Made by a program: the position numbers and the translations under genes. Under the pieces are notes generated by a model. The model saw nothing but the letters and a program-made list of their open reading frames with translations. It did not search any database and was not told the DNA's origin. From assembly GCF_001194135.2 (NCBI RefSeq), contig NC_068993.1:23753006-23817005 (forward strand): a stretch of 64,000 bases of DNA, read 5' to 3'. Shown here in pieces: positions 4,935 through 50,700 of this stretch. Numbering within the stretch: position 1 is the stretch's first letter; the number at the start of each line of letters is the position of its first letter. The DNA is from Octopus bimaculoides. Taxonomy: Eukaryota.

Positions 4935-6524
4935 TCCCTCGCACTCTATCAGCGAATTGGACGCACCCCTATTTTACAAGGATATTTTGCGGAGAAAAAC
5001 AAGTTTGATATGTTGTATCCTACATTTATTGAAAGATAATTTTAAGTGATCTTGTAGGGAAAACTGTATGATTCTATGTATGAAATACAATATTGTGACA
5101 GTATCCCGAAATGAACTTTGAAATCATATGTAGCTTTACAGTCACCTTTAAATGAAACAAAATTAAATTTTCTGTAGCAAAAGAAAAATATCCAATAGTA
5201 TCAATGGATCCTGGTATATGCAAACAAAAGGCAAATATACTGATAAAAACTGGTGCAAACCAATCAGTAAATTACAATAAATGTGATGAATTCCAATAGA
5301 TAATTACAGTTGCTCATTCTCATTGTTGCCATCCATATTACCAGTACTCTGTTCATCCCTGGAGTTCTCTGCAATAGGATCATGATCATCAATATTTTCT
5401 TCAAATAATAAATCGTTCTCAGTACCATCAAGAGCAATACTAATGTCATTTTTTTTAATGATTGCACAACTACTTCTTTTATAGCATTCCAAGAACTTTT
5501 TATCCACTCATTCACTTGTGTAATACTAGCCCTTTTCCTTTTTCCTGTTGGTGTCACTTTAAAATCGAAAGACTGCATCCACTTGCTCCACTCCTCCCGT
5601 AAGAATCCTCTAAATGGTTTATCGACTGAAACATCGAAAGGTTGCAACTGGCTGATTCGGCCTTCTGGAAATACAGCCAACTGGGTCTTCAGTTCTCCAA
5701 CAAGCTCGGTTCTATAATCCCGAAATGAGTCCCGAATTAATAAGGCAGGTTTCTTTAATAGCCCACCAGGACGACTGGACCACAGTTTACCAAGCTACAA
5801 TTTCATTCGTCTCTTATCCATCCAACCAACCTTTTCTATGGACATGAACATAAATGTCATTAGGTATCTTTTCTTTTGGTAAAGTCTTACTTTAAAAAGT
5901 AAAACAGGTGGATGTTTTGTGCCATCAGTGCATCATGCTATTACAACTATATAGTGTATCATTTCACGGCCACATGTTTTAACAGTCACAGATTTACCAT
6001 CATTGGATCCTATTATCTTGTTTGATGGCACATCAAATGTCAAAGAGACTTCGTCCATATTAGCTGTCTGTGAATGTTCGAAATTAGCATCTTCTCTTGA
6101 TTTAATGAAATTCCTGTAAAACTTTAGTATTTGGTATTCGTATTTAGGGACATTATTTGTGCTATTCTTTTCTTTGCCCTCATACATAGGTCATTTCTCC
6201 TCATAAATCTGGAGCACCATGATGTTGATCGTTTAAAATCATTCATATCCATGTCAATTGCTATAAGTATTGAATGGTATATAATCATTTTAGTGGATAC
6301 TGCGAAGCCTGATTTTCATTGGTCTATTCCCACGGAGGTAGTGTTTGCTACGTTTAGCAGCTTTCTGCTGCTTGCTGCTCTTCTTGTTTCCTCCAAGTCC
6401 TTACCCTTTCCTCGGTTGGTGGTGGACTAAAATACTGAGCAGCTGCTCTATTACTGTGTTCTTTTGCATATAGTACGACATCAAGTTTAGATTTGATGTT
6501 ATAACCGTTTATTTTATCAGCCAT
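4935..6524 (-). mobile_element. Degenerate pogo-superfamily transposon, POGK-like (Brinker-type DBD, CENP-B HTH, DDE_1)
   Basis: ATG at 6524 gives MADKINGYNIKSKLDVVLYAKEHSNRAAAQYFSPP (Brinker DBD-like). ORF 5933-6187 has ANMDEVSLTFDVPSN; ORF 5264-5680 has PEGRISQLQPFDVSVDKPFR...TPTGKRKRAS. A terminal-like sequence CTCTAT...GACGCACCCCTATTTT lies near 4945-4980. The ORF is disrupted. Confidence 0.85.
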
Positions 6525-7919: not shown

Positions 7920-8640
7920 GGGAAATCGTCACCATTTTATATTTTAAATTTCGCGCATTGTTTGTTTTTGATTTTGTCGACTACATAGTATAGTAAGTTT
8001 AGTTAGGTTTAGTAAAACAGTATAATGACGCAATTTACTCTACCAGAAATTTGGAAACGATATGCTGTACTGTTTGACATTCGTACCGAAAGCTCCAATA
8101 GGAACCGTTTACAGTGTTTGGATGTCAATCGGAGGACAGTGCAATCTGAGGACATGTACTGAGATTGATAAAAATCAAACAACCGTCAACATCATGGTGT
8201 TTGGAGTGATCACTAGTGATGGCGACGTTATGCCTCCATTCATCTTTCTACGCAGCCTCAGACTCAACTCGGAGGCCTGCATCAATTGCCTGAGGAAGAT
8301 GGTGTTGCCATGGATCAAGAGGGTGGCTGCTGGAAGACATTCTCTCGGACAAAAGGACTCTGCACCTTGCAACACAAACAGAATACAGTCATGTACGACC
8401 ACATCACCCCTAACATCTGGACCCTTACTTCTCTGACTGCAACCCACTTTATTATTATGGGTGGGGTGCAGTTGAGCGAGAGACCAACAAGTTTCTGTAA
8501 AACTGACGGCAAGGATTATTGCAGCCGTCACTTAACTTAAACGAGAAGACCGTCCAGAAGAGGTGCAGGAGATTTTGAAGTCGTCTGGAGGCCGTGGGTG
8601 AAACCAATGGCGATTTTATTGAATAAATTTACTCTTTAGT
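7920..8640 (+). mobile_element. Tc1/mariner DD37D (maT-type) transposase relic, internally deleted
   Basis: VNIMVFGVITSDGDVMPPFIF...VLPWIKRVAAG...QKDSAPC, then frameshifted DHITPNIW...DCNPL.YY..G (cf. WPPNSPDLNPLDY), ending ...EAVGETNGDFIE*. Confidence 0.85.
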
Positions 8641-11815: not shown

Positions 11816-12029
11816 CACACACGCACCCCCCCACACACACACATACACACATATATATATATATATATATAGGTGTGAGAAAGTTGGTATGTGAAAGCAC
11901 GTGGTTGAATGTCTAAAAGATAATATGAGTGAAAAAACTACAGAAGTCTTTTGTTACATGGTTAAAGTGTATATTTAAATTGTCAGAAAAATGTTATAAA
12001 ATTTTTTTGGTATATAAACATTGTATTTG

Positions 12030-13620
12030 GAGAAATAACCGGTTTCGTGTTGTCTTTTCAAATTTCACTACTTCATCGTAACATGTGTTCCCTCCCGTGT
12101 GGAAGGAAGAGTTCTAGATAGGGGGAGGTAATTAGGGATTTCTTCCGGTATAAGGGAGATAATCGAAATGTAGGAGGTGGTAGATTTTGATTAATTTACC
12201 ATGGTTTTGTTCTATATCTTTTTCCCCTCTCAGTGGGGTGATGAATTTCCTTATTAAATGTGTTAGCAATGATTAAGTTTGGGTTTGTATTTGTGAATGA
12301 AGAAGGTTTCTTTATTTAATCTAATTTGTGTTGGTGTTCTAATGGCACATTGATAGAATGGAAAGATTATAAATTGTGGTAGCATTTGTTTTGTACATTT
12401 CTCAATATGCTCACTAAATGGTATCATTCAGTATTCTGGGCATGCAATCTGCTGTCGATGCAGAGTGCATCTGCGTCTGAGCGATGATCCTGTGGACCCT
12501 ATGTAGTTTTCGTGGCAGCCCGAGCATCTTATTACATAAATAAGGTTTTCTGATGCACAAGTAAAGTCAGATTTAACTTTGAATTTTTGTCCCTCTTTGA
12601 AGAGGCACTCTGAACCTTCTAGAATGTTTGGGCATGTTGCGTAATTTGGGCAACCACATTTTTTTACTTTTGCATCTGTTATTTGGAAAATAATTTTGCC
12701 TTTGTGAGGATCTTTTTCAGTGATTTAGGTTTTTTGTACCTTTTAATGATTTTGTGTGTGTGTAAAATCTCCTTCAATTTGGGGTCCTTATGTAGCATTG
12801 GTATGTTTTGGGTGATGATGGTGAAGGCTTCTTTGTTTCTGGGGTTGTATGTGGATATGTACGGTAGTATTTTCGGGGAATGTGTGTTGCTGTGTTTAAC
12901 TTTTCTTAAGTTTTCTATGTTAATTTGTGATGCACGTCTGATTCCTTCCTCTATGAGTTGAACTGGGTAGTGTCTGTCAATTAGTGTGTTTTTGAGTTCT
13001 TGTAGTCTGTAGTATCTAGTATTTTCTTCTGACACTATTGTGCATATTCTTCTTGCAAGGTTGAAGGGGATGTTTGTCTTGGTGTGAATCNNNNNNNNNN
13101 NNNNNNNNNNNNNNNNNNNNNNNNNNNNNNNNNNNNNNNNNNNNNNNNNNNNNNNNNNNNNNNNNNNNNNNNNNNNNNNNNNNNNNNNNNNNNNNNNNNN
13201 NNNNNNATGAATTCAACCGATTTAGTAATGAATTCTTTACTGATCCTGTTTGGGATTTCTTTCGGGAATTGATCCAGCCAGAATTGAATTGCCTGAAGTC
13301 CATAATTATGAGGTATACTGGTGTATAAATTAATCACGTCAAATGAAACCATGATTGTTTCTTCCTTGACTTTCTTTGGGAGGTGATTTAACATATCCAA
13401 GTCATCTCTGATATAGCTATTGATGTGTTTAAGGAAGGGTTTTAGGAGGATGTCCATAAATAGACTTAGTCTGTGTGTTTCACAGGCTGGGCCAGCTATG
13501 ATGGGTCGCAGTTTTAGGTCCCCCGGGTTTGGTGTATGTATGTATGTCTTTGGTGATTTTTTAATATGGGGTAGAACCGCCTTTGGCAGTAATTACAGCT
13601 TAATTTCTATGAGGTATGGA
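12030..13620 (-). mobile_element. Penelope-like element: RT (split by an N gap), linker and GIY-YIG endonuclease, with 3' pLTR-like end
   Basis: LRPIIAGPACETHRLS.FMDILLKP and SFDVINLYTSIP (PLE RT motifs). After the gap: HTKTNIPFNLARRICTIVSEENTR, YKKPKSLKKILTKAK, and DFTCASENLIYVIRCSGCHENYIGSTG (GIY-YIG, about 12490-12560). A few frameshifts and stops. Confidence 0.92.
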
Positions 13621-13624
13621 CTCG

Positions 13625-14232
13625 TACAAAGTTCTTGGAGTCATGATGGTGGAGGATATCGAATCCTTACTTGTTTTTCTAAAGTGCACCATAAATGTTC
13701 AGTAATATTAAGATCTGGGGACTGTGGTAGCCAGATAAAAATGTTCAACTAGAATGTTCCTTGTGCCATTCAGGAGTCGATATCCTGAATGGCACAAGCT
13801 GTAGTTTTTTCAGCTGAGTTCCTGAACTCTCTACAACCATCAGGGTTGCTACCTAACCACTTAACACTTACAAAGGAGGTCCAATCATGCTGCTCAGGAT
13901 AATAGTGCACCAATTCGTACAGCTAAACTTTAGCTGTACGAATTAGTGCACTATCATCCTGAAAGATTGCATTTGCCACCGGAAACAGTTCTGCAAACAG
14001 GATGAATTCGATCAGATAAAATGTTTAGTGTTCATTATAAATCTGCCATGAAGGGATACGATTGGGCTGGCAGATTTCCACCCCCAGAACATTGCAGATC
14101 CTCCTCCATGTTTAACAGTTGGAAGAAGGCAGTCTGAGTCAAATGCTTCTTTTGTTTGTCTCCGCATGTATACTCGGCCGGTGGTCGGAAATAAGGCAAA
14201 GGATGACTCGTCCGAGAAAATAACATTTTTCC
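13625..14232 (-). mobile_element. Tc1 (DD34E) transposase fragment interrupted by a templated insertion
   Basis: VIFSDES at 14205-14224, PTVKHGGGS, FQDDSALIRTAK ending at 13929, then after the insertion PEWHKEHSS...IWLPQSPDLNITEHLW (13690-13735). Confidence 0.88.
13799..13893 (+). repeat. Local copy of about 95 bp of the Helitron helicase sequence at 14428-14523
   Basis: CTGTAGTTTT.TCAGCTGAGTTCCTGAACTCTCTACA.CCATCAGGGTTGCTAC.TAACC...CCAATCATGCTGCT is present at both positions with only a few mismatches. Confidence 0.9.
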
Positions 14233-14239
14233 ACTGTTC

Positions 14240-15248
14240 TAGAGACCAATTCTGTAGGTTTTTACTTCAATCTAAATGCTTGGTAACAATCAATGGCTCT
14301 GTGAGTGAGCCATCTTAGATCCACGTAATGATGCTATCCACAAAAGCAACTGGGATCCCTTGCAGCTGTTGCCCGGACAAGAACAGTCATTCAAATCCCT
14401 CGACACTGTCATTGATCAGGACCAGACTGTAGTTTTGTCAGCTGAGTTCCTGAACTCTCTACAGCCATCAGGGTTGCTACTTAACCGCTTCACACTTACA
14501 AAGAGAGCCCAATCATGCTGCTGAGGAATTTGGATCCTCCTCATCTGTACAATTGAACCAGACTGGTGGTGAAAGCCATGCGACCCCATGTCCTAGAGGC
14601 AACAATTATGAGTGGGAACTATAAGGGTGTCGATGTCTTCATTCATCGAATCCCGTTGATCCCATATGACCTCTTCTTTGAATTTAAACGGTTCCAGTTC
14701 TCAGTGAAAGTACGTTTCGCACTGTCAATAAGCAAGCCTCAAGGACAGACTCTCAAGGTTAATGGACTTCACCTTTGTTTCTCTCATGGGCGATTACATG
14801 TAGAATCTTCGCGAGTTGGAAGTCCCCAATATCATTTCGTTTATGCAACAATTAAAGGACACACTCAAATCACCGTATATTTAGAAGCTCTAAATAATTT
14901 AACTGTGATTGATTTTCGGATTTGTTTCAACACATATGTTTATACTCACGCCATCTGATAGATTTTTTGTTAAATGTACTTATTAACAGGAGGGGAGCGC
15001 CCGCAGGCTGTTCTTCTCAAGTTTATGTATTTTCAGGTTTAACGTGTTTCAAATACTGACAATTGAAAGTGATTGCAGACAAAGAACAACCTAGTTTTTA
15101 ACAATTTTAACAGTGAGAATATCGGATAAAGCATGTTATTGGCATTAATAGTTTGTGCCTCAACTAATTAGTGTTGAGAACTGCATAATCCATGTAAGTT
15201 TCATTATTTTCAATAACCAGCGAAACATAAAGTTGGTATCTCAGCTAG
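14240..15248 (+). mobile_element. Helitron 3' portion (PIF1-type helicase C-terminus, subterminal hairpin, CTAG)
   Basis: EFLNSLQPSG...PIMLLRNLDPPHL..TRL; ORF 14566-14958 RIPLIPYDLFFEFKRFQFSVKVRFALSISKPQGQTL...CFSHGRLHVESSRVG. Hairpin ACCAGC/GTTGGT at 15216-15237 is followed by CTAG at 15245-15248 and then T. Confidence 0.88.
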
Positions 15249-15575: not shown

Positions 15576-18088
15576 AATTAGTGCTTTCACTTTTCTTCTT
15601 TATGATCATGTTATATTAATTTAATTTTCTAAGTCATTGATATTTTATTCTATTCTTTTCACTCACCGAAACAAATTCAGAACTGAAGCTTGCAAACGTA
15701 ACTTTGTTAATATTCAGTTCCTTTCGTTCGTATGATTATCTACTCAATACTCCCTCCTTGTATTTCTAAGTAAACATCGCCCTCGATTCTCCCTTATTTG
15801 CTGGTCAAAAAAAGCACCAATATGTGCATTTTGAAATAGCATATAAGGGGTTATATATTTTTAAAAAATCAATATCCTATTTAACATTTTAATAACTGCC
15901 ATCTATCATATCACATATACATTTGGAAACCCATGGTTAGTTAGAATCAACAATAAAAGATCAATCAATAGTTTTTCCTGTTCTTTACATGTAATAAATT
16001 CAATTAATTCGTAATACAATTATTTAATTACATTAATTATCTTTAAATCAATAGCTTGAAATATTTTTGTAACTATATCGTCCATTTAGTCGTTGTATTT
16101 ACGTAAATATATATTTTTTATTCTATGATTCTAAGCTCACTTTTCGGATAAGTTAATTCCTTTCGTATCTGACATGAGCCTAATATACCTATTTACCTTG
16201 TCGTTATTATATACACTTCAATAAAATGTATTTCATCATTTTTTTATTAATTATATTAATGCCCCAGTACTATCAGTATGGATTATTTTTTTTAAATAAT
16301 GTTTTAAACCAATATATTAATCATGTCTCTTAAATTATTACTTTTGAATAATAGGGGAGATAACATTTCCTACTTATATTCGAATACAATACATTGTTAA
16401 TTTCAGTTATCATTTGTTTATCTCCGCCACGAAGAGGAAATAATAGGGGATTGTTATAGTAAAATGATTTAACAACTAATTATCATGTTATTATAGTTCA
16501 AAATATTACGCTTTTAAATCTAAATAAAGTTACTAGTTTTATCATTATATACATATGTAAATATACACACACACACATATTTTTTTTAAACATACATATA
16601 TATATATATATATATATTCATATATATATATATTCATATATATATATATATTATGTATTCTCATACATACATATTTATTCATATACAGATCCATACATAC
16701 TTATTCATATATAGGTACATATGTGCCTATTGACCAGGATTAAATTTTTAATATATAAACATACTAGTATATGCAGTGATATATTCCATCTCACACTCGG
16801 TAATTCGTATACATCATATTGCACCAGTAATACGCACCTATACGTATCAAATACACATATATATATATAAGAAATAAATGTATATCATCAACGTAATGTA
16901 AATTTGTATGCCACATAGCCCAAAAATTATAATATAGTAGAGTGGATTTCTTTTTCAATTACATTTATCAATATTAATTATTATGATCCTATACGATGGG
17001 TTATTTCTTCATTCTTCAATTTTATCTCTATACATTTGCATATATTATTTGCCCCAGAAATATTAATATTCATATACTTATAATATACTGAAATCATATA
17101 GATATTTTCTGTTATACTTTATACTTTCTACATAAAAGCACATTTTATGCTTATTATATATACCCATATTCACACTTATTCACATACACAGAAAATATAC
17201 ATATATAACCAATATGTTCACATACACACACGCATACAAACAAATCCACATATATACACATAGGTGTATATACCTGCATGCATATTATGTATATTGACAT
17301 GCCCATACATACACATATACACATACCCTCTCATATTCAATATATTCATATATATATATATATATATANNNNNNNNNNNNNNNNNNNNNNNNNNNNNNNN
17401 NNNNNNNNNNNNNNNNNNNNNNNNNNNNNNNNNNNNNNNNNNNNNNNNNNNNNNNNNNNNNNNNNNNNNNNNNNNNNNNNNNNNNNNNNNNNNNNNNNNN
17501 NNNNNNNNNNNNNNNNNNNNNNNNNNNNNNNNNNNNNNNNNNNNNNNNNNNNNNNNNNNNNNNNNNNNNNNNNNNNNNNNNNNNNNNNNNNNNNNNNNNN
17601 NNNNNNNNNNNNNNNNNNNNNNNNNNNNNNNNNNNNNNNNNNNNNNNNNNNNNNNNNNNNNNNNNNNNNNNNNNNNNNNNNNNNNNNNNNNNNNNNNNNN
17701 NNNNNNNNNNNNNNNNNNNNNNNNNNNNNNNNNNNNNNNNNNNNNNNNNNNNNNNNNNNNNNNNNNNNNNNNNNNNNNNNNNNNNNNNNNNNNNNNNNNN
17801 NNNNNNNNNNNNNNNNNNNNNNNNNNNNNNNNNNNNNNNNNNNNNNNNNNNNNNNNNNNNNNNNNNNNNNNNNNNNNNNNNNNNNNNNNNNNNNNNNNNN
17901 NNNNNNNNNNNNNNNNNNNNNNNNNNNNNNNNNNNNNNNNNNNNNNNNNNNNNNNNNNNNNNNNNNNNNNNNNNNNNNNNNNNNNNNNNNNNNNNNNNNN
18001 NNNNNNNNNNNNNNNNNNNNNNNNNNNNNNNNNNNNNNNNNNNNNNNNNNNNNNNNNNNNNNNNNNNNNNNNNNNNNNNNNNNNNNNN

Positions 18089-18310
18089 CGTCGCTCTGAC
18101 CGCATCTCGGGCAGGTCGGTCGGGTGGTTTTCGAACCGTGTCTGTAGATCTTCTCTCGAACTGGTAGTGCGTCTCGATAGCATTGTCAAGCCAGGGATCT
18201 CTGGAAATTATCCATAGGCCCCGGCCCGAACGTCGTCTTGAAAAGGCGGGTTAAGAATTTCTCGTCGACACCCAGGTTTGCCCCGAGAGTGTCGTCAGAC
18301 CTCCCCTCCA
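18089..18310 (-). mobile_element. L1/Tx1-clade LINE ORF2 C-terminal (zf-RVT) fragment
   Basis: Reverse complement translates ...FQRSLA*QCYRDALPVREKIYRHGSKTTRPTCPRCGQSD, matching W....ALP.RE.L.RHG....CPRCG. GC- and CpG-rich relative to the window; runs into a gap. Confidence 0.75.
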
Positions 18311-18311
18311 C

Positions 18312-18383
<72 letters not shown>

Positions 18384-18384
18384 C

Positions 18385-18446
<62 letters not shown>
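18312..18446. repeat. (GATA)n microsatellite
   Basis: Direct reading. Confidence 0.98.
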
Positions 18447-18774
18447 TTAGAATCAGTTTTAGTTGAGTATAATTTCTATTACATTTTTCTGACTATATAA
18501 CCTCAAAAATATTCTTGTTACTTAATATACTTCTATTATAATGCCTAATTTCAGCTATTTATTTAATATATTCATATATAGCTATAGTTTTAAAATTGGA
18601 TTTTAATTTTTAACTGACATCAAATCCCATAGTTTTACTTCACTTAAGTTTAATAAAGAGATATTTGTTTATGTTTTTACATGAGTTTATTTTTCATTTC
18701 CCATGTTAATAAGGTTTCCTTTTCTTTTCATTATTTTATAGCTCTCTTCTAAGCGTAATCTACAGAATCTAAGG

Positions 18775-19035
18775 ACATAAGGACACAGGAAATGTGCTTA
18801 AGTCTCTCTGTGAGATTTAGAAATGGATCATTTCTAATTTTTTTAATCAATGAATGTGTTTCACTGGAAATATATACGTTTACAAGAGCTTGACAAGCAT
18901 CTTCAGCCAGCTAGATATGCTACTTCAGGCTGATGACGAGGAAAAACTCAGAAATATGTCCCTGAATGCAGGCTAGGCTGGGTGGATGTGCTTGCCTCCC
19001 CCTTGTAAACATAAGGACACAGGAAATGTGTTAAG
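18775..19035 (+). repeat. 234-bp unit bounded by a 22-bp direct repeat and carrying a hammerhead motif (retrozyme or PLE-LTR-like)
   Basis: ACATAAGGACACAGGAAATGTG occurs at 18775-18796 and 19009-19030, each followed by (C)TTAAG. Confidence 0.75.
18894..18994 (+). ncRNA. Candidate type I hammerhead ribozyme with extended stem I
   Basis: Stem I TTCAGG (18924-29) pairs with CCTGAA (18961-66). Core CTGATGA at 18930-36; stem II GAG-GAAAAA-CTC; GAAA at 18951-54; minimal stem III ATATGT; GTC cleavage triplet ending at 18960. Stem I extends via TGC/GCA, CTAG/CTAG, CCAG/CTGG and CAAGCA/TGCTTG. One deviation: a C-A mismatch at the base of stem II. Confidence 0.68.
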
Positions 19036-19160
19036 GCCGACAAGAAGCGGTCCAACTTCCTAGGGCTAAATAGCAGTAGTATGGTTCCCTTATTGGGACT
19101 TTCACGTTAATGTCCTAGGCATATCAAATTGCCTTGCCTTGTTATCTTATCTTATTTAAC

Positions 19161-19194
<34 letters not shown>

Positions 19195-19203
19195 ACATAT
19201 ATA

Positions 19204-19242
<39 letters not shown>

Positions 19243-19876
19243 ACAAATGGGGACCGTAGTGCTGTTGGCAAATGTAAGTAGGAAAGCAGGTCCACATATG
19301 TATAATTTTGATAGTTAACATAAAAGAGACATAATAATCTTGCAAGTCTTCACAGTGTCGGAATTAATGTAAAAAAATTCCGAAAATATATCTAAACAAT
19401 TATTTACATTCATACTTAGTTTATAACATTATTTTCAATTCTTGTCTCTCTCACACCTTCGTTTTTTTTCATCATTTTTGCTTAGATATCGAAACAAATG
19501 CAAATTTTTCATACCTCCCACTAGCAACGCTCTTATCACCTTTACTTTATTCTCAATCCTCTTCCCCATGATATTTAGTATAAACCAGCTGGGAGTAAGC
19601 AGCACTTCCTAGTATATCCAAGAATGAGGAAACTGTTATTTCATAACTTTTGGCGGTAACATTTCATAACTTTTGGCGGTGACATTTCAAAATTTGCCTG
19701 ACAGCACTGATTCAGCCTTGCTAGAGTTATAAAAAGTAATAGTAATGTGATTTAAATATAATTATGGAAATGCGTACAGAAAGGTTTATCAAAGGCACAA
19801 TTTCTCTAACTTGATGTAGATCAGCCACCTTCAGTATTATTTTTTTTATTCTTCTTTAAATAATAATCTTTATATG

Positions 19877-33679: not shown

Positions 33680-34290
33680 TCTCATCTATGTCGTCCAATA
33701 GGACGCCCCAAAATTATTTCCACACGTCTTCTCCATTCATCTTGATCTTCAGTAAAGGTCCTCAGCTCCTGTGCCCCATTCATAACAGTACCCTCCAGCA
33801 TGTTGTCGATATAGGTGGTCTTTCTCCTTCCCACCCTTGGTTCTTCCTTCTGTTGGTTGTCAGAGCACTAGCCTGTTAGCAATTTCATCGAAGTGTCTAA
33901 TGCAGTGACCAGCTAACCTCATCCTTCAATGCTGTGTTTTCAATGTTACTTTTGGTAGGCCCTGGTATAAGTCGGCGCTTGTATGACTCTTCCGGGAGAC
34001 ATTGAGTTCCATTCTAAGCATCCTCACATAACAACTGTCCAACTGCTTCTTCAATGTTTTGGTGAGCGTCCATGTTTCAACCCCGAATAGAATAATAGAT
34101 TCCACTGTTGCCAGAAACTAACTCACTTTCAATTTCCTTGCTAACTTTGAACACCATACCTTTCTCAATTTATGCCTTGCGCTCCAGGCAAGAGCTTTCC
34201 TTGCTACGATGTCTCTTTCAGAACTTTGTCTCCACGCACCAAGGTATTTGAAATGTTCAACTCCTTGAGCGACTTACCGAAGCATTTCGT
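33680..34290 (-). mobile_element. RTE-clade LINE 3' segment (thumb to C-terminus) of a 5'-inverted insertion
   Basis: Reverse complement: GKSLKE..HFKYLGAWRQSSERDIVARKALAWSA...FLATVESIILFGVETWTLTKTLKKQLDSCYVRMLRM...RMRLAGHCIRH...GRPIGRHR*. Confidence 0.9.
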
Positions 34291-34304
34291 GGTTGAATAC
34301 TTGC

Positions 34305-34869
34305 AGTTCTGTTTTAACCGAATAAAACATAAGATCGACAAACAATTGCAACCAAATCAAAATGGATTCAGATCAGGATGGTCAACATCTCACATTGTTG
34401 CACTTAGAAGACTGATAGAGGGAGTTAAGAGCCATAACAGGAAAACTATCATTATCTATGTAGACTTTAAAAAGGCGTTTTATTCAGTACATAGAGAAAT
34501 GATGATAAAGATACTTAAAGCATATGATATTCCACCAAGAATTTTGAGAGCAAAAAGTAAGCTGTATAATAACAATAGAACGAAAGTGATCACTCCTGAT
34601 GGAGAGACGGAATACTTTGAAGTCAAAGCCGGAGTATTACAATGCGATACTCTAGCAGCCTATCTCTTCGCCATCGTTCTGGACTATGTAATGTGTAGAA
34701 GTACGAGGGCAAGGAAGAACTGGGATGCAAACTGCATAGGCAAAGAAATAAACCGCATCAAGCAGTAAATTACCTACACTATGCTGATGACCTGGCATTA
34801 CTAACAGAGCAGACAGATCAGGCACAGGAGGTGCTGAGCAGATTAGAGCAGCAATCGGGGAAGGTAGGA
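34305..34869 (+). mobile_element. Inverted upstream RT-core segment of the same RTE insertion
   Basis: NRIKHKIDKQLQPNQNGFRSG, YVDFKKAFYSVHR, AGVLQCDTLAAYLF, YADD at 34780-34791, ending ...QSGKVG. The whole insertion is flanked by TTGTATAATAAA at 33668-33679 and 34870-34881. Confidence 0.9.
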
Positions 34870-35074: not shown

Positions 35075-36710
35075 ATCCTCCTTAGCATCGCTTTGCTGAC
35101 GAAGATTAGGAAGGCTGTTCTCCACGTCGTCTACACACACGCTCGTGGCTGATAAGGCCGATGTAGGATCAACATATACGATTACATTGATGACAGGGGT
35201 AGGGTTGTCAGGGTCTGATGATGCAGCTGCATTATGTTTTCATATCTGACATTTTTCTTCAGGAGAGGCACTGCGACAAATCTCAAAGGAGGAAACAACA
35301 TCGCTGATGGTATGGTGCCAAACGATGCGGTCTGCTGTAGAGTGGATCACTCACGATAATCAATGTATGTCACAAACTCTGTCGCGGTGGCCAATGGTGA
35401 GCTCACCGTACATGATGATCTTGGATAGGCGGTGGTCTTTCATCCTATCAACGTGCCCTGCCCAATGTAAAATAGCCCTGATGTAAAATAGCTTCCAGAC
35501 TGATGACCTTTGCTCGCTGGAGGACCTCAGTATTACTGATGTAATCGCTCCAGTAAATGTTAAGGATGGTATGGAGCAGCGTTGGTGTAAAACCTTCAAG
35601 GAGCCTGAAATGACAGGACATAGAGCCATATATGAGCGTCGTGAGAACGACCACACTGTAGGCGCTAACTTTTGTGCTGATCTAAATGCTGCTAATTGTT
35701 CCACACACGCTTGTACAGTGTGCCAAATAATTTGTTTGCCATTGCAAGTCTGTTGTCAATTTCTTTGCTGATACTGGCTTCTAATGAGATGTTACATCCA
35801 AGATAAGTGAACTGCTCTACCGACTTCCGTTCTGTCTCAACAATGGTGATGTGGGTCGGGCTGTGCTCTTCCTGAGGAGCTGGTTGTTGTAGGACTTAAG
35901 TCTTTTTCAAGCTTACTTCCAGCCTGAAGAGCTGGGCGGCCTCTGCGACAAGTGAAGCATTATCTGAAAAGAATAATTCCTGGATCAGTTGCTCTTGAGT
36001 TTTTGTGTGGGCTTGTAGGCGTCGGGTTTGAAAAGGCTGCCATCTAGACGGTACCTGATGTAGACACCGTCTGCAGCGTTGAATTTTGCAGTGGCCTGCT
36101 TGAGCATCATGCTGAAAAAGATGCTTAAGAGAGTTGGTGGCATCCTGCTTCACGCCGTTTTTGATGGGGAATGGCTCAGATATGTTGCTATTCAGGCGGA
36201 CTTGTCTTTGTTGGTCTTCATGAAGCTGGATGATTATCGTTAGGAATTTTGGGGGACAGTTTAGGATCTTCCACAGACCTTTCCTGCTCACAGTTTTGAG
36301 CGCTTTTGCCAGATCGACAAATGTTACATAAAGTGGTTTGATTTGCTTCTAGCACTTTTCTTGGAGCTGCTTGAGAACGAAAATCATATCTGCTGTGCCC
36401 CTGATACTACATTGGCTTTCTGAAAGATGATTTTCGGCGATGGACAGAACAAGTCTGTTAAGGAGTAATCTTGTTAGAACTTGTCCTGCAGTAGAAAGCC
36501 GGGTGGAATCCCAGGTAATTTGAGCAGTCTGACTGTCTCCTTTATATTTTCTTTTCCTACAGTGTAATGATGACAGCATCCCGGAGATCTTGTGGCAGCT
36601 TCTCTGTTCCCAGCACACGAGGAACTCGTGGGGTTTAACACGCAGGACAGGACCCCCATGCTTCCATATCTCATGTGGCATTCCATCGACTCTTGCTGCC
36701 TTTCTATACT
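35075..36710 (-). mobile_element. 5'-truncated RTE (BovB-like) LINE, decayed
   Basis: LLLNRLV..IAENHLSESQC, ADMIFVLKQLQEKC, FVDLAKA..TVSRKGLWKIL, NGVKQ, LHWAGHVDRMKDHRLSK, and a C-terminal IGLISHERVC followed by a short 3' UTR TCTTCGTCAGCAAAGCGATGC. Confidence 0.88.
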
Positions 36711-47716: not shown

Positions 47717-50700
47717 TACATACATGATGGCTGTCCACTCGTGACCGAGGAAGTCTATTGCTGACATTTAAGAACATTGTGCCTACTAGGACGAACTTAT
47801 ATTTTGAATCTGAGGCTCCGTTGGTGGCTAAAGTGCCCTGCTCTTGAAAAGAATACACGACTGCAAACATTGCAAGCCAAGATTTTCCCATTCACTACGC
47901 TAGTAGTGTGCTTTCAAGTAACACGCTTAAATGTTTCATGAAGAATACGTACTTTTTCAAAGGTGTTGCCCCCACTCCTTAACCTGCTTCCTCCTTCTGT
48001 GACGGTGATAGGTATTGCTCTCCCAATCGGTCTCCTGCATATCACAGGCCTTTAATGAGGACTTGACACTTTCCTTAAATCGCGGCCTTACCTTAGTTTC
48101 CTGCCGGGGTCTCTATCCACTAACAAGTTCCCCTATAGCATCTGTTTAGGGATCCTGCTATCCTTCACGTAACTGGTGTTTGTGCACCATCGCCTCATTA
48201 CGCCAGATATCAGCTTTCCTCAAGACTTGTGTGTCTGGAGTTTTTACGGTCTAGCCAACATTCAGAATGTGTCTCAGACATCTCTGATGGAAGAGTTCAG
48301 TGTCCTTTACATGAGTAAGCGAGCGATGTCAGTACGCATGCATAGTGCACAGCAATTTTTGTTTGCCATGTAATGCCATTGTGGGACCAGACACGAGACT
48401 CAAGAGACCGGAAGGAATCGATTGCACTCTGCAGCCTGAAAGATATTTCATCATCCAGGAAGCAAGAACGGCTGAGTGTGCTTCCCAGGTAGACAAACTT
48501 GTCTACCACTTGCAGTGTTGTTCCTTCAACCAAGGTAGCTGGTTCAACATATGGATATCCTGGTACAGACTGGAACATTACAACAGTCTTATCCAGGCTA
48601 ATGCTGAGTCCAAATGCCTTCCAAGAAGCAGAAATACGATTCATAACTATTTGCATTTTATCCATCATATGAGTGACTAAGTCACAGTCATCTGCATAAA
48701 GGAGGTCAAGAATAATAAGAGACTCGAAAACTTTTGAATTGGCAGCAAATCGGCGGAGATTAAAGAGGCGCCCAGCAGATCGATACTTGACATTTTCTCA
48801 GAGAGCTAACATTAGCAAAAGCATGAGTAAAAGCAGTAGCAAAGTACAAAGAAAAGAAAGTTGGGGCAAGTATGTCACCCTGATTGAGACCATTCTCTTT
48901 AGGAATGGGTCCCGCCATGCCACTACCAACAGTGACCTAAGCCTCCATTCCGTCATGAAATGATTTAATTATAGATACAAGATGATCCGGACATCCAAGT
49001 TTACCAAGTATTTTCCGTAGCAAGGCCCTATTCGCAGTATCAAAGGCCTTGGTTAGCTCAATGAATACCTGGATAAGATCTATATTCTGCTCATAGGATT
49101 TCCTCTGCATCTGTTTTGCTGTGAAAATCATATCTATTGTCCTTCTTCCAAATCGGAAGCTACATTGAGATTCAGATAGGACATCATTTACGAGACACCC
49201 ATTCAGACGGGTAAGAAGAATATTTGCCAGAACCTTGCCAGCAGTAGATAGTAGAGCAATACCTCTGTAGTTAACACACATTATTCTGGTTCCTTTTCCT
49301 TTATAGAGAGGAAGGATAATTGTATCCTTCCAGCCCTTAGGGCATTGCGCCAGACTACACTGATAAGTTCCTGAAGGGACTGTATGATGTAATAACCACC
49401 AAATCGCAAAACCACAGCACAAATTCTATCCTTTCCAGGTGCCCTACCAATATTCAATTTACTTATTGCTATCGTTACCTAAGGAATCAATGATAGGTCT
49501 TTGTTGCATAGTATCAATCACTGTTTCATCCACAATTGACTCGTAGTTTAGGTGTTCAAAGAAGTAGTGCATCCAGTGACTTGTGATTTCTTTTGAATTG
49601 GTAAGTACAGTAGAAGATTCATTGGAAAGCAAAGGAGGTGATACATAGATTTTAGGCCCATAGACATACTTCATAAGATGGTAAACATTCTTGCTGTCAT
49701 ATCCATCAACAGCAGCCTGAACATCACGCGCAAGATCCTCCCACCAAGTGTTCTGCATCTTCATAAGAGATCACTGCAGTAGTGATTTTACACTGCTATA
49801 GTGAGCAAGTGCTAGATTTTACTGCACAGCTGAAAGTCCTCTATGCAGCAATACATTGTGGGCATATGCGCTTCACAACTAATAGTCGCTGAACGTCAGC
49901 ATCATTTTCATCAAACCTCTCTCTGTGTCAAGCAGTAGCATATCCCAGTGTTTCAGCAGCACATTGAAGAACCACATTGAAGATTTCGAAAATTTTCCCA
50001 TATTGTAGTATTTGCAATGCTGCACAGGCGAGTCTAAAGCTGTTTCCTCAACACAGCATCATACATCTTGTGGACATTCAGACGCCGAGGAATGTCAACT
50101 GGCCCTCTTCTTTTTCACTCTAATCCGGAACTTTGCTCGCACCAGACTGTGGTCTGTCCAGCATTCCGATACATGAAAGGACTTGACGTTATAAATGTCA
50201 TAGCTCTCACGCTTGCGGATGATGACATAATCCAGCAAGTGACGAACTTTAGACCTTGGATGCATCGATGTTGTTGTGGGATCACTTTTGTCCATAAAAT
50301 GACTGCTTGCAACGTAGAGTCCATGTTCATCGCAAAGCTCAAGCAGCATAATAGCATTGCTATTAATTTTCCCTACAGAATTGCTAGAGAATTCCATGTT
50401 TCTTCGTTTGTTCCAACCCTATCATTGAAATCCAGGTAGAATGACTTTATCAGAACTGGGTATTGTCTTAAATATGGCTCTCAGATGGGTATAAAATATT
50501 GTTTTATCTTCATCACAACTATTCAAAGTAGGTGCGTATGCACTTATTAGAGTAGCAAATCTCCCACCTTTCAGGTGCAGTCGTAATCATTAGACGTTCA
50601 TTTAGAGGAACAGAAAACTGCTCAAACTTCTTAAGGATATCAGATCAAACTGCAAGCCAACACTAGACTCTATTCGCTCCTCATTCAGTTTCCTCTTTCA

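What the first reader, a model, noticed from the sequence alone, without database searches (positions are those of the whole stretch)
18775..19035. Hammerhead ribozyme in a 234-bp direct-repeat-bounded unit: candidate cephalopod retrozyme or circRNA element
Seen directly: a complete type I hammerhead topology (TTCAGG-CTGATGA-C-GAG[GAAAAA]CTC-A-GAAA-TATGTC-CCTGAA). Stem I extends about 35 bp with internal loops (18894-18994), and the motif lies between two copies of ACATAAGGACACAGGAAATGTG 234 bp apart. Established: minimal type I hammerheads with palindromic stem III occur in Penelope pLTRs and in small non-autonomous metazoan retrozymes that yield circular RNAs. Inference: this is a roughly 1.1-mer copy of such an element, probably mobilised by a PLE like the one at 12-13.6 kb. 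The consensus likely has a U-A pair closing stem II (TGAG/CTCA), with this copy carrying a T>C change. I do not know whether this family has been described.
Basis: partly seen in the sequence, partly recalled or inferred. Interest (0 to 1): 0.85.

Follow-up and report, generated by a model that had tools for sequence, protein, structure and literature searches.

The report
Lone hammerhead ribozyme retroelement copy
A genuine-looking self-cleaving hammerhead ribozyme sits in a single 234-base unit of a small parasitic element in a cephalopod genome; this kind of element is already known in other animals, and this copy is probably inert.

Summary
At 18924-18966 (+) every invariant hammerhead core base is present: a 6-bp helix I, a 4-position helix II (3 pairs plus a C.A mismatch) and a 1-2 bp quasi-palindromic helix III. 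The predicted cut is after C18960. A 27/28-nt direct repeat lies 234 nt apart. Chance is unlikely: a fixed-geometry descriptor gave 0 hits in 60 Mb of random sequence. The motif also carries the UAC bulge and A-rich loop 2 of the Rfam HH9 consensus. No Rfam hammerhead model reaches its threshold (best 16.6 bits against 52). Helix I extends to 39 bp, and the 234-nt unit folded as a circle is unusually stable (z = -3.9). This is the canonical metazoan type I architecture linked to non-LTR retrozymes, not the minimal Penelope type. The retrozyme reading remains unproven. There is only one ribozyme and about 1.1 units here, and I found no second copy in the window or any reachable collection. Copy number, tandem arrays, covariation and circles could not be tested. 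The Penelope element at 12.3-13.5 kb is real but broken, on the other strand, and unrelated in sequence. Verdict: a solitary, probably inactive copy; a new member of a known kind.

The parts
18775..19008 (+). One 234-nt unit of the element, taking the repeat as part of the unit. If the repeat is instead a target-site duplication, the insert is 18803-19008 (206 nt).
   Evidence: Direct-repeat spacing is 234. Folded as a circle it gives -67.4 kcal/mol, z = -3.86, with 0 of 300 shuffles as stable, placing it in the lowest 1.6% of 234-nt windows of this sequence. GC is 40%.
18775..18802 (+). Left copy of the direct repeat (ACATAAGGACACAGGAAATGTGCTTAAG).
19009..19035 (+). Right copy of the direct repeat (ACATAAGGACACAGGAAATGTG-TTAAG), with one indel relative to the left copy.
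18878..19010 (+). Long imperfect hairpin, which is the extended helix I (39 pairs with small internal loops) carrying the ribozyme at its tip.
   Evidence: MFE fold and pair list. Inverted repeat I1, 37-nt arms, 73% complementary.
18921..18923 (+). UAC internal-loop bases immediately 5' of the 6-bp helix I. This is the 'loop 1' side of the loop-loop contact in canonical type I hammerheads.
   Evidence: Aligned to the unpaired UAC of the Rfam HH9 consensus.
18924..18966 (+). Hammerhead domain: helix I 18924-18929/18961-18966; core CUGAUGA 18930-18936; helix II plus loop 2 18937-18950 (C.A, then GAG/CUC, loop GAAAAA); GAAA 18951-18954; helix III A18954-U18959 with UAUG between; predicted cleavage after C18960.
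   Evidence: The ribozyme-competent fold is only 1 kcal/mol above the MFE.
18817..18837 (+). Small perfect hairpin (TTAGAAAT-GGATC-ATTTCTAA) in the non-ribozyme half of the unit, followed by a T7 run at 18839-18846.

Best explanation
The region is a solitary genomic copy, about 1.1 units, of a small non-coding, non-autonomous retroelement that carries a canonical metazoan type I hammerhead ribozyme. That places it among the elements described as non-LTR retrozymes. The following life cycle is inferred from the published model, not shown here. Master loci with head-to-tail units are transcribed. [quoted passage not shown] A host tRNA ligase (RtcB type) closes it into a rod-like or branched circle. 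A reverse transcriptase from an autonomous element, most likely a Penelope-like element, copies the circle past one full turn, and the cDNA integrates. Copying past one turn would leave exactly what is seen here: one unit plus a 27-nt terminal overlap. With one ribozyme, a 1-2 bp helix III and a C.A mismatch at 10.1/11.1, this locus can at most nick a read-through transcript weakly. It is most likely an inert, dead-end copy.
For: All invariant core bases are present: C3 U4 G5 A6 N7 G8 A9, G12 A13 A14, A15.1-U16.1, C17. The architecture equals the published definition of canonical metazoan type I hammerheads (PMC4209133): helix I 6 bp, helix II 4 bp, helix III 1-2 bp with a small palindromic loop, acting as dimers in tandem repeats. 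The alignment to Rfam HH9 shows a shared UAC bulge, 6-bp helix I, 4-position helix II and NAAAAA loop 2. Chance is excluded in practice: 0.023 per window for a loose descriptor, and 0 hits in 60 Mb of random sequence for the fixed geometry, before counting the UAC and loop matches. Helix I continues for 39 pairs, and the competent fold is within 1 kcal/mol of the MFE. The 234-nt circle is unusually stable (z = -3.86, 0/300 shuffles). Unit size of 234 nt and GC of 40% fall in the published ranges of 150-450 bp and <45-50% (PMC7229834). The published model predicts cDNAs longer than one unit (PMC7761336). Dispersed monomer derivatives of retrozyme families are reported in other animals (bioRxiv 10.64898/2026.07.22.740005). 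A mismatch at the base of helix II is tolerated in axolotl HHR_Amex2 (PMC7229834) and occurs as U.U in cephalopod PLE motifs. A GIY-YIG Penelope-like element in the same window shows such elements colonised this genome.
Against: No second copy of the unit was found anywhere I could search, so the multi-copy, tandem and covariation criteria are unmet or untested. The locus is not a tandem. No Rfam hammerhead model reaches its gathering score. The 10.1/11.1 pair, usually G-C, is C.A, and helix II has only three Watson-Crick pairs. The repeat could be a target-site duplication, since PLE endonuclease gives variable-length duplications (PMC8557442). There is no evidence of transcription or circles.
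Confidence: 0.55

Rival explanations
1. It is a short insertion (18803-19008, 206 nt) flanked by a 27-nt target-site duplication. The insert would be either the 3' end or pseudo-LTR of a severely 5'-truncated Penelope-like element, or a fixed-end SINE-like derivative of one (Schistosoma Sm-alpha style). No circular intermediate would be involved.
For: PLE insertions are often strongly 5'-truncated, give target-site duplications of variable length, and carry hammerheads in their terminal repeats (PMC8557442, PMC4209133). The long hairpin ends within two bases of the boundary of the right repeat. Cephalopod PLE 3' ends in the fetched loci carry hammerhead-like motifs 85-170 nt before a (TA)n tract, and a (TA)n tract lies 200 nt downstream here.
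Against: The ribozyme architecture is canonical, not the PLE minimal type, which has a short helix I, a long helix II and no loop contacts (PMC4209133). There is no similarity to the PLE in the window or to any of seven fetched PLE loci. No PLE coding remnant adjoins it. No tRNA-like or Pol III box was found.
Confidence: 0.25
2. It is a host-retained (domesticated) hammerhead acting in cis on a host transcript, like the intronic HH9/HH10 ribozymes of amniotes.
For: The best Rfam match is to HH9, the conserved intronic family. The core is intact.
Against: The score is far below the family threshold (16.6 against 52 bits). The flanking direct repeat marks an insertion. The surroundings are transposon debris and microsatellites, with no recognisable exon. 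The weak helix III and the C.A mismatch argue against a selected single-copy ribozyme.
Confidence: 0.07
3. It is a chance resemblance with no ribozyme ancestry.
For: It is the only copy seen. Rfam is silent at normal settings. The 121-nt hairpin alone has only z = -2.15.
Against: The fixed-geometry descriptor gave 0 hits in 60 Mb of random sequence. My analytic estimate is about 2e-9 per position, roughly a dozen per 2.7-Gb genome, falling well below one once the UAC bulge and A5 loop are required (own arithmetic). Independent features also coincide: the 39-bp helix I, the bounded 234-nt unit and circle stability at z = -3.9.
Confidence: 0.04

Closest known systems
Metazoan non-LTR retrozymes (coral Acropora 220-240 bp, mussel about 350 bp, axolotl 330-350 bp units; Cervera and de la Pena 2020, PMC7229834)
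   Same: It has a type I hammerhead with a 6-bp helix I, 4-position helix II and loop 1/loop 2 bases. The unit is a few hundred non-coding nt with low GC, and the predicted circle is highly self-paired. Helix III is weak and palindrome-like, implying cleavage as a dimer, as in amphibian HHR_Amex1. There is a mismatch at the base of helix II, as in HHR_Amex2.
   Different: Only about 1.1 units and one ribozyme are present here, not a tandem. No family members, expression or circles have been shown. The host is a cephalopod, and I found no published cephalopod retrozyme in the searchable literature.
Rfam Hammerhead_HH9 (RF02275), canonical type I hammerheads conserved in amniote introns
   Same: It shares the UAC bulge, 6-bp helix I, CUGAUGA, 4-position helix II with an xAAAAA loop, GAAA and UC, aligned column for column.
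   Different: The score is 16.6 bits against a gathering score of 52. Five helix III positions are deleted, the helix II sequence differs, and 10.1/11.1 is unpaired. The taxon and genomic setting differ.
Minimal hammerheads of Penelope-like elements (Cervera and de la Pena 2014, PMC4209133)
   Same: Type I topology; helix III of one pair with a short self-complementary loop; expected to act as dimers; the same genome holds PLEs.
   Different: PLE minimal motifs have a short helix I (4-5 bp), a long helix II (7-8 bp) and no loop contacts, and they sit in the terminal repeats of a PLE. The cephalopod PLE motifs I recovered read ...GAAA-CCGG/CUAG-UU with short helix I. The candidate has none of these traits and no PLE sequence next to it.
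Schistosoma Sm-alpha and newt satellite 2 hammerhead repeats
   Same: Small non-coding repeats carrying canonical type I hammerheads. From my memory of the crystallised Schistosoma construct (not checked here), it also has UAC 5' of a 6-bp helix I.
   Different: Those are abundant multi-copy or tandem families with demonstrated cleavage. Here there is a single copy with no biochemical data.

Membership tests
Hammerhead ribozyme, canonical metazoan type I | Invariant core: C3 U4 G5 A6 N7 G8 A9, G12 A13 A14, A15.1-U16.1, H17 | tested here: met
   CUGAUGA ... GAAA ... U C at 18930-18960
Hammerhead ribozyme, canonical metazoan type I | Helix I open-ended, 6 bp up to an internal loop 1; helix II 4 bp with loop 2; conserved loop bases for the loop-loop contact (PMC4209133) | tested here: met
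   UUCAGG/CCUGAA; UAC bulge; C.A+GAG/CUC; loop GAAAAA. These align to the HH9 consensus UAC / 6 bp / 4 bp / CAAAAA. One of the four helix II positions is a mismatch.
Hammerhead ribozyme, canonical metazoan type I | G10.1-C11.1 pair at the base of helix II | tested here: not met
   C18937 opposite A18950. Mismatches at this position exist in active axolotl HHR_Amex2 (PMC7229834).
Hammerhead ribozyme, canonical metazoan type I | Helix III 1-2 bp capped by a small palindromic loop (dimer-forming) | tested here: met
   A-UAUG-U. AUAUGU pairs with itself through 4 A-U and 2 G.U pairs; duplex energy is only -2.2 kcal/mol.
Hammerhead ribozyme, canonical metazoan type I | Score at or above the gathering threshold of an Rfam hammerhead model | tested here: not met
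   No hit at gathering. Best is HH9 at 16.6 against 52 bits. A PLE hammerhead from Argonauta is also invisible to Rfam, so Rfam is insensitive to short-helix-III forms.
Hammerhead ribozyme, canonical metazoan type I | Site-specific self-cleavage | not testable with these tools
   Needs in vitro transcription of monomer and dimer constructs.
Non-LTR retrozyme | Head-to-tail tandem of at least two units, each with a hammerhead | tested here: not met
   One ribozyme and 1.1 units at this locus. There is no other hammerhead of this kind in 64 kb. Monomer derivatives of such families are described elsewhere (bioRxiv 10.64898/2026.07.22.740005).
Non-LTR retrozyme | Unit of about 150-450 nt, non-coding, GC below 45-50% | tested here: met
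   234 nt; longest ORF 40 aa; GC 40%.
Non-LTR retrozyme | Multi-copy family in the genome with compensatory changes in the helices | not testable with these tools
   The source genome cannot be searched by DNA here. There were no copies in the window, metagenome, viral or prokaryote collections, or in protein-space searches.
Non-LTR retrozyme | Unit RNA predicted to fold into a stable, highly self-paired circle | tested here: met
   -67.4 kcal/mol, 65% of bases paired, z = -3.86.
Non-LTR retrozyme | Expressed as linear and circular RNA of unit length | not testable with these tools
   Needs RNA-seq junction reads, an RNase R northern or divergent-primer RT-PCR.
Penelope-like element terminal repeat (minimal hammerhead) | Motif lies in the terminal repeat of an element encoding RT plus GIY-YIG endonuclease | tested here: not met
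   The only PLE coding remnant is at 12269-13540 on the minus strand. It has no sequence similarity to the unit.
Penelope-like element terminal repeat (minimal hammerhead) | Short helix I (4-5 bp), long helix II (7-8 bp), no loop-loop bases (PMC4209133) | tested here: not met
   The candidate has helix I of 6 bp extended to 39 bp, helix II of 4 positions, and HH9-like loops.

The most novel reading that the evidence does not exclude
This is the first sighting of a cephalopod non-LTR retrozyme family. Elsewhere in the octopus genome there would be tandem arrays of this 234-nt unit that are transcribed, self-cleave as dimers and accumulate as small circular RNAs, possibly in neural tissue. They would be mobilised by the Penelope-like elements that expanded in octopods.
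Probability: 0.3. Interest if true: 0.5.

Novelty: new member of a known kind. Interest (0 to 1): 0.32.

Why it matters
If the family exists in multiple copies, it would extend ribozyme-processed circular RNA retroelements to cephalopods. Their genomes are dominated by SINE, LINE and Penelope expansions, and hundreds of small 'unclassified SINE' families remain uncharacterised there (PMC13282606). It would also give a concrete 234-nt sequence to probe for circles in octopus RNA. As it stands, this single locus adds an example rather than a principle. Type I hammerheads in small repeats and their link to Penelope-like elements are established in corals, mussels, flatworms, insects and amphibians.

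Tried and rejected
1. The Rfam scan of the whole window at gathering thresholds gave nothing. A 401-nt scan at E<=10 gave only a spurious RT-9 match.

2. BLASTN of the 261-nt unit and of 18601-19200 against the window gave only self hits and microsatellites.

3. A pattern scan of JGI metagenome contigs gave 7 hits. All had unrelated flanks, about the number expected by chance. Viral contigs and GTDB genomes gave 0 hits.

4. A six-frame pseudo-protein of the unit, searched against 5.8 billion proteins to catch ORFs called on other copies or tandem arrays, gave no hit at E<=0.1.

5. An exhaustive HMMER search with the 40-aa ORF over the ribozyme gave two hits. Both are unrelated repetitive proteins whose scores come from summed repeats.

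6. I fetched seven loci around homologues of the window's PLE (Logan, ENA, Argonauta hians) to look for the unit or a similar ribozyme in PLE ends. There was no similarity, and only different minimal motifs were present.

7. An exact look-up of ten window ORFs, meant to locate the source contig or orthologous loci, found none on record. An empty-site test was therefore impossible.

8. A tRNA or SINE-head search of 18000-19500 found none.

9. I rejected the idea that the PLE at 12-13.6 kb is specifically tied to this unit, and I rejected the label 'minimal' for helices I and II.

Full report
**What is there**

The plus strand at 18924-18966 reads UUCAGG-CUGAUGA-C-GAG-GAAAAA-CUC-A-GAAA-UAUG-UC-CCUGAA.
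- Every invariant hammerhead position is present: C3 U4 G5 A6 U7 G8 A9, G12 A13 A14, A15.1, U16.1, C17.
- Helix I is a perfect 6 bp.
- Helix II has four positions: a C.A mismatch at 10.1/11.1, then GAG/CUC, closed by a 6-nt loop GAAAAA.
- Helix III is one A-U pair over UAUG, or A-U plus U.G over AU.
- The direct repeat is real and slightly longer than reported: 18775-18802 against 19009-19035, 27/28 nt with one indel, start-to-start spacing 234.

**Is it more than chance?**

- A loose descriptor (helix I >=6, helix II >=3, mismatch allowed at 10.1/11.1) finds only this site on either strand. It expects 0.023 sites per window from 300 dinucleotide-preserving shuffles.
- A descriptor with the observed fixed geometry gave no hit in 60 Mb of first-order Markov sequence trained on the window.
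- My arithmetic from base composition gives about 2e-9 per position. That is roughly a dozen sites in a 2.7-Gb genome before any loop feature is required.
- Two loop features were not chosen by me. They come from the Rfam HH9 consensus: an unpaired UAC directly 5' of the 6-bp helix I, and an xAAAAA loop 2. Both are present, which pushes the genome-wide chance expectation well below one.
- Helix I also continues for 39 pairs out to 18878/19010. The ribozyme-competent fold is only 1 kcal/mol above the MFE.
- The 234-nt unit folded as a circle has -67.4 kcal/mol, z = -3.86, and 0 of 300 shuffles are as stable.
- I therefore treat the motif as a real hammerhead by descent.

**Database recognition is weak, and this must be stated**

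- Rfam gives nothing at gathering thresholds in 64 kb, and no hammerhead at E<=10 in 401 nt.
- Only a 67-nt search brings up Hammerhead_HH9, at 16.6 bits against a gathering score of 52.
- Rescaled by me to one family and the whole window, this corresponds to E of about 0.01.
- The loss of score comes from the deleted helix III and the unpaired 10.1/11.1.
- As a control of sorts, a canonical-core hammerhead in the end of an Argonauta hians Penelope-like element is not reported by any Rfam hammerhead model, even in a 67-nt search. Rfam is therefore insensitive to forms with a one-pair helix III.

**What kind of hammerhead**

Cervera and de la Pena (PMC4209133) define canonical metazoan type I hammerheads by three features:
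- helix I of 6 bp and helix II of 4 bp, interacting through loop bases;
- helix III of 1-2 bp capped by a small palindromic loop;
- activity only as dimers when copies are adjacent.

They contrast these with the minimal Penelope motifs, which have helix I of 4-5 bp, helix II of 7-8 bp and no loop contacts. The candidate fits the canonical definition. Its helix III (AUAUGU) is self-complementary through four A-U and two G.U pairs, but weak at -2.2 kcal/mol. In corals, mussels and amphibians, canonical motifs are the ones found in small tandem repeats called non-LTR retrozymes (PMC7229834). The axolotl HHR_Amex2 has a U.U mismatch at the base of helix II and still cleaves as a dimer (PMC7229834). 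The C.A mismatch is therefore a handicap, not a disqualification.

**The Penelope element**

The region 12269-13540 (minus strand) does encode a PLE.
- It has a GIY-YIG endonuclease segment (Pfam E = 5e-4, 20.7 bits, just under the cut-off), the linker region and an RT N-terminal piece.
- Its homologues carry RVT_1, HTH_animal and GIY-YIG domains. They are 81% identical in a Logan contig and 50% identical in Argonauta hians. This also places the window in an octopod-like cephalopod.
- The copy is dead. The three segments lie in three different frames, there is an in-frame stop in the endonuclease part, and a scaffold gap sits at 13091-13206. The RT is cut off near 13540, where Tc1-like sequence begins.
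- It lies 5.4 kb from the unit on the other strand and shares no sequence with it.
- Its own 3' region holds a different hammerhead-like motif, described under 'Noticed in passing'.
- The presence of PLEs in the genome is consistent with the retrozyme model. No specific link is shown.

**The missing evidence**

The octopus genome is not searchable by DNA with these tools. Negative results:
- No other copy in the window.
- Seven chance-level, unrelated hits in 241 M metagenome records.
- None in viral or prokaryotic contigs.
- No predicted protein anywhere that overlaps a copy in any of six frames.
- Two spurious repeat-protein hits in the exhaustive search.
- No similarity in seven fetched PLE loci.

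The protein-space negatives are weak evidence against a very abundant or highly expressed family, because short ORFs on cephalopod-like contigs are present in that collection. They are not decisive.

**Repeat: overlap or target duplication?**

- The published retrozyme model has a reverse transcriptase running more than once around a circular template (PMC7761336). That would leave one unit plus a terminal overlap, as seen here.
- However, PLE endonuclease produces target-site duplications of variable length, and PLE insertions often carry 30-40 bp 'tails' (PMC8557442). A 206-nt insert flanked by a 27-nt duplication is therefore a live alternative.
- The long hairpin closes within two bases of the right repeat, which fits either reading.
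- Only other copies or an empty orthologous site can decide.

**Mechanism and state of this copy**

- Shown here: the sequence, its fold propensity, its bounded unit, and its architecture.
- Inferred from the family model: transcription of tandem masters, dimer-mediated cleavage after GUC, ligation by a tRNA ligase, reverse transcription by a PLE, and integration.
- With a single ribozyme the locus cannot release a unit RNA. With a one-pair helix III and an unpaired 10.1/11.1, it would cleave poorly as a monomer. It is most likely an inert relic.
An equally simple history is G>A at an ancestral CpG (CUCG to CUCA), which would restore a C-G pair and a fully paired CGAG/CUCG helix. Neither history can be tested without relatives.

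**Literature**

Searches for hammerhead or retrozyme together with octopus, cephalopod or squid found no description of such an element in cephalopods. A 2026 repeat annotation of Octopus vulgaris lists Penelope-like elements and about 900 unclassified SINE families but does not mention ribozymes. The element class itself is well described in other phyla.

**Verdict**

The motif is a real hammerhead with canonical type I architecture, in a retrozyme-sized, highly structured unit. It is a lone and probably dead copy whose family could not be demonstrated.
- It is a new member of a known kind, of modest interest.

Noticed in passing
window 12032-12066 (minus strand); L008 1132-1171; L012 about 1740-1790; L013 about 1710-1760; L009 12480-12525 (+) and its inverted copy near 6182 (-): The 3' regions of cephalopod Penelope-like elements carry hammerhead-like motifs with helix III of one pair plus a CCGG or CUAG loop. 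Core positions 3 and 8, which pair as C3-G8 in the active fold, read C/G (Argonauta), U/A (window PLE and L008), A/U (L013) and A/G (L012). This may be covariation of the 3-8 tertiary pair. Helix I co-varies between the window PLE and L008. Position 10.1/11.1 is U.U in three of them. Helix II is very short in some, so these may be decayed.
   Followed up: partly
window 12269-13540 (minus strand): A degenerate Penelope-like element. RT N-terminal piece: 13209-13540. Linker/HTH segment: 12682-13086. GIY-YIG endonuclease: 12269-12703. The three pieces lie in three different frames, with one in-frame stop in the endonuclease part and a scaffold gap at 13091-13206. The closest protein is 81% identical (Logan SRR9105617); Argonauta hians is 50% identical.
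   Followed up: yes
window 13550-14600 (minus strand), 5264-5680 (-), 8062-8436 (+): Remnants of DNA transposons. A DDE_1 domain lies at 5264-5680 (Pfam). Tc1/mariner-like reading frames, judged by eye, abut the truncated 5' side of the PLE.
   Followed up: no
window 34172-34768 (+), 48297-49764 (-), 35360-36681 (-): LINE-type reverse transcriptase fragments (RVT_1). The window is largely transposon debris with ten N-gaps totalling 3407 nt.
   Followed up: no
window 18305-18450 and 19159-19245: An (AGAT)n microsatellite lies upstream of the unit and a (TA)n(TG)n tract lies downstream. PLE 3' ends in the window (near 11870) and in Argonauta (L009 near 12600) also abut (TA)n tracts, matching the reported microsatellite insertion bias.
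   Followed up: partly
L010 6977-8218: A tandem array of seven near-identical tRNA genes spaced 195 nt apart lies about 2 kb upstream of a PLE ORF. It is in a 521-kb ENA contig of unknown organism.
   Followed up: no
window 18839-18846: A T7 run lies inside the unit on the ribozyme strand. It would act as a Pol III terminator, which argues against Pol III transcription of this unit.
   Followed up: no
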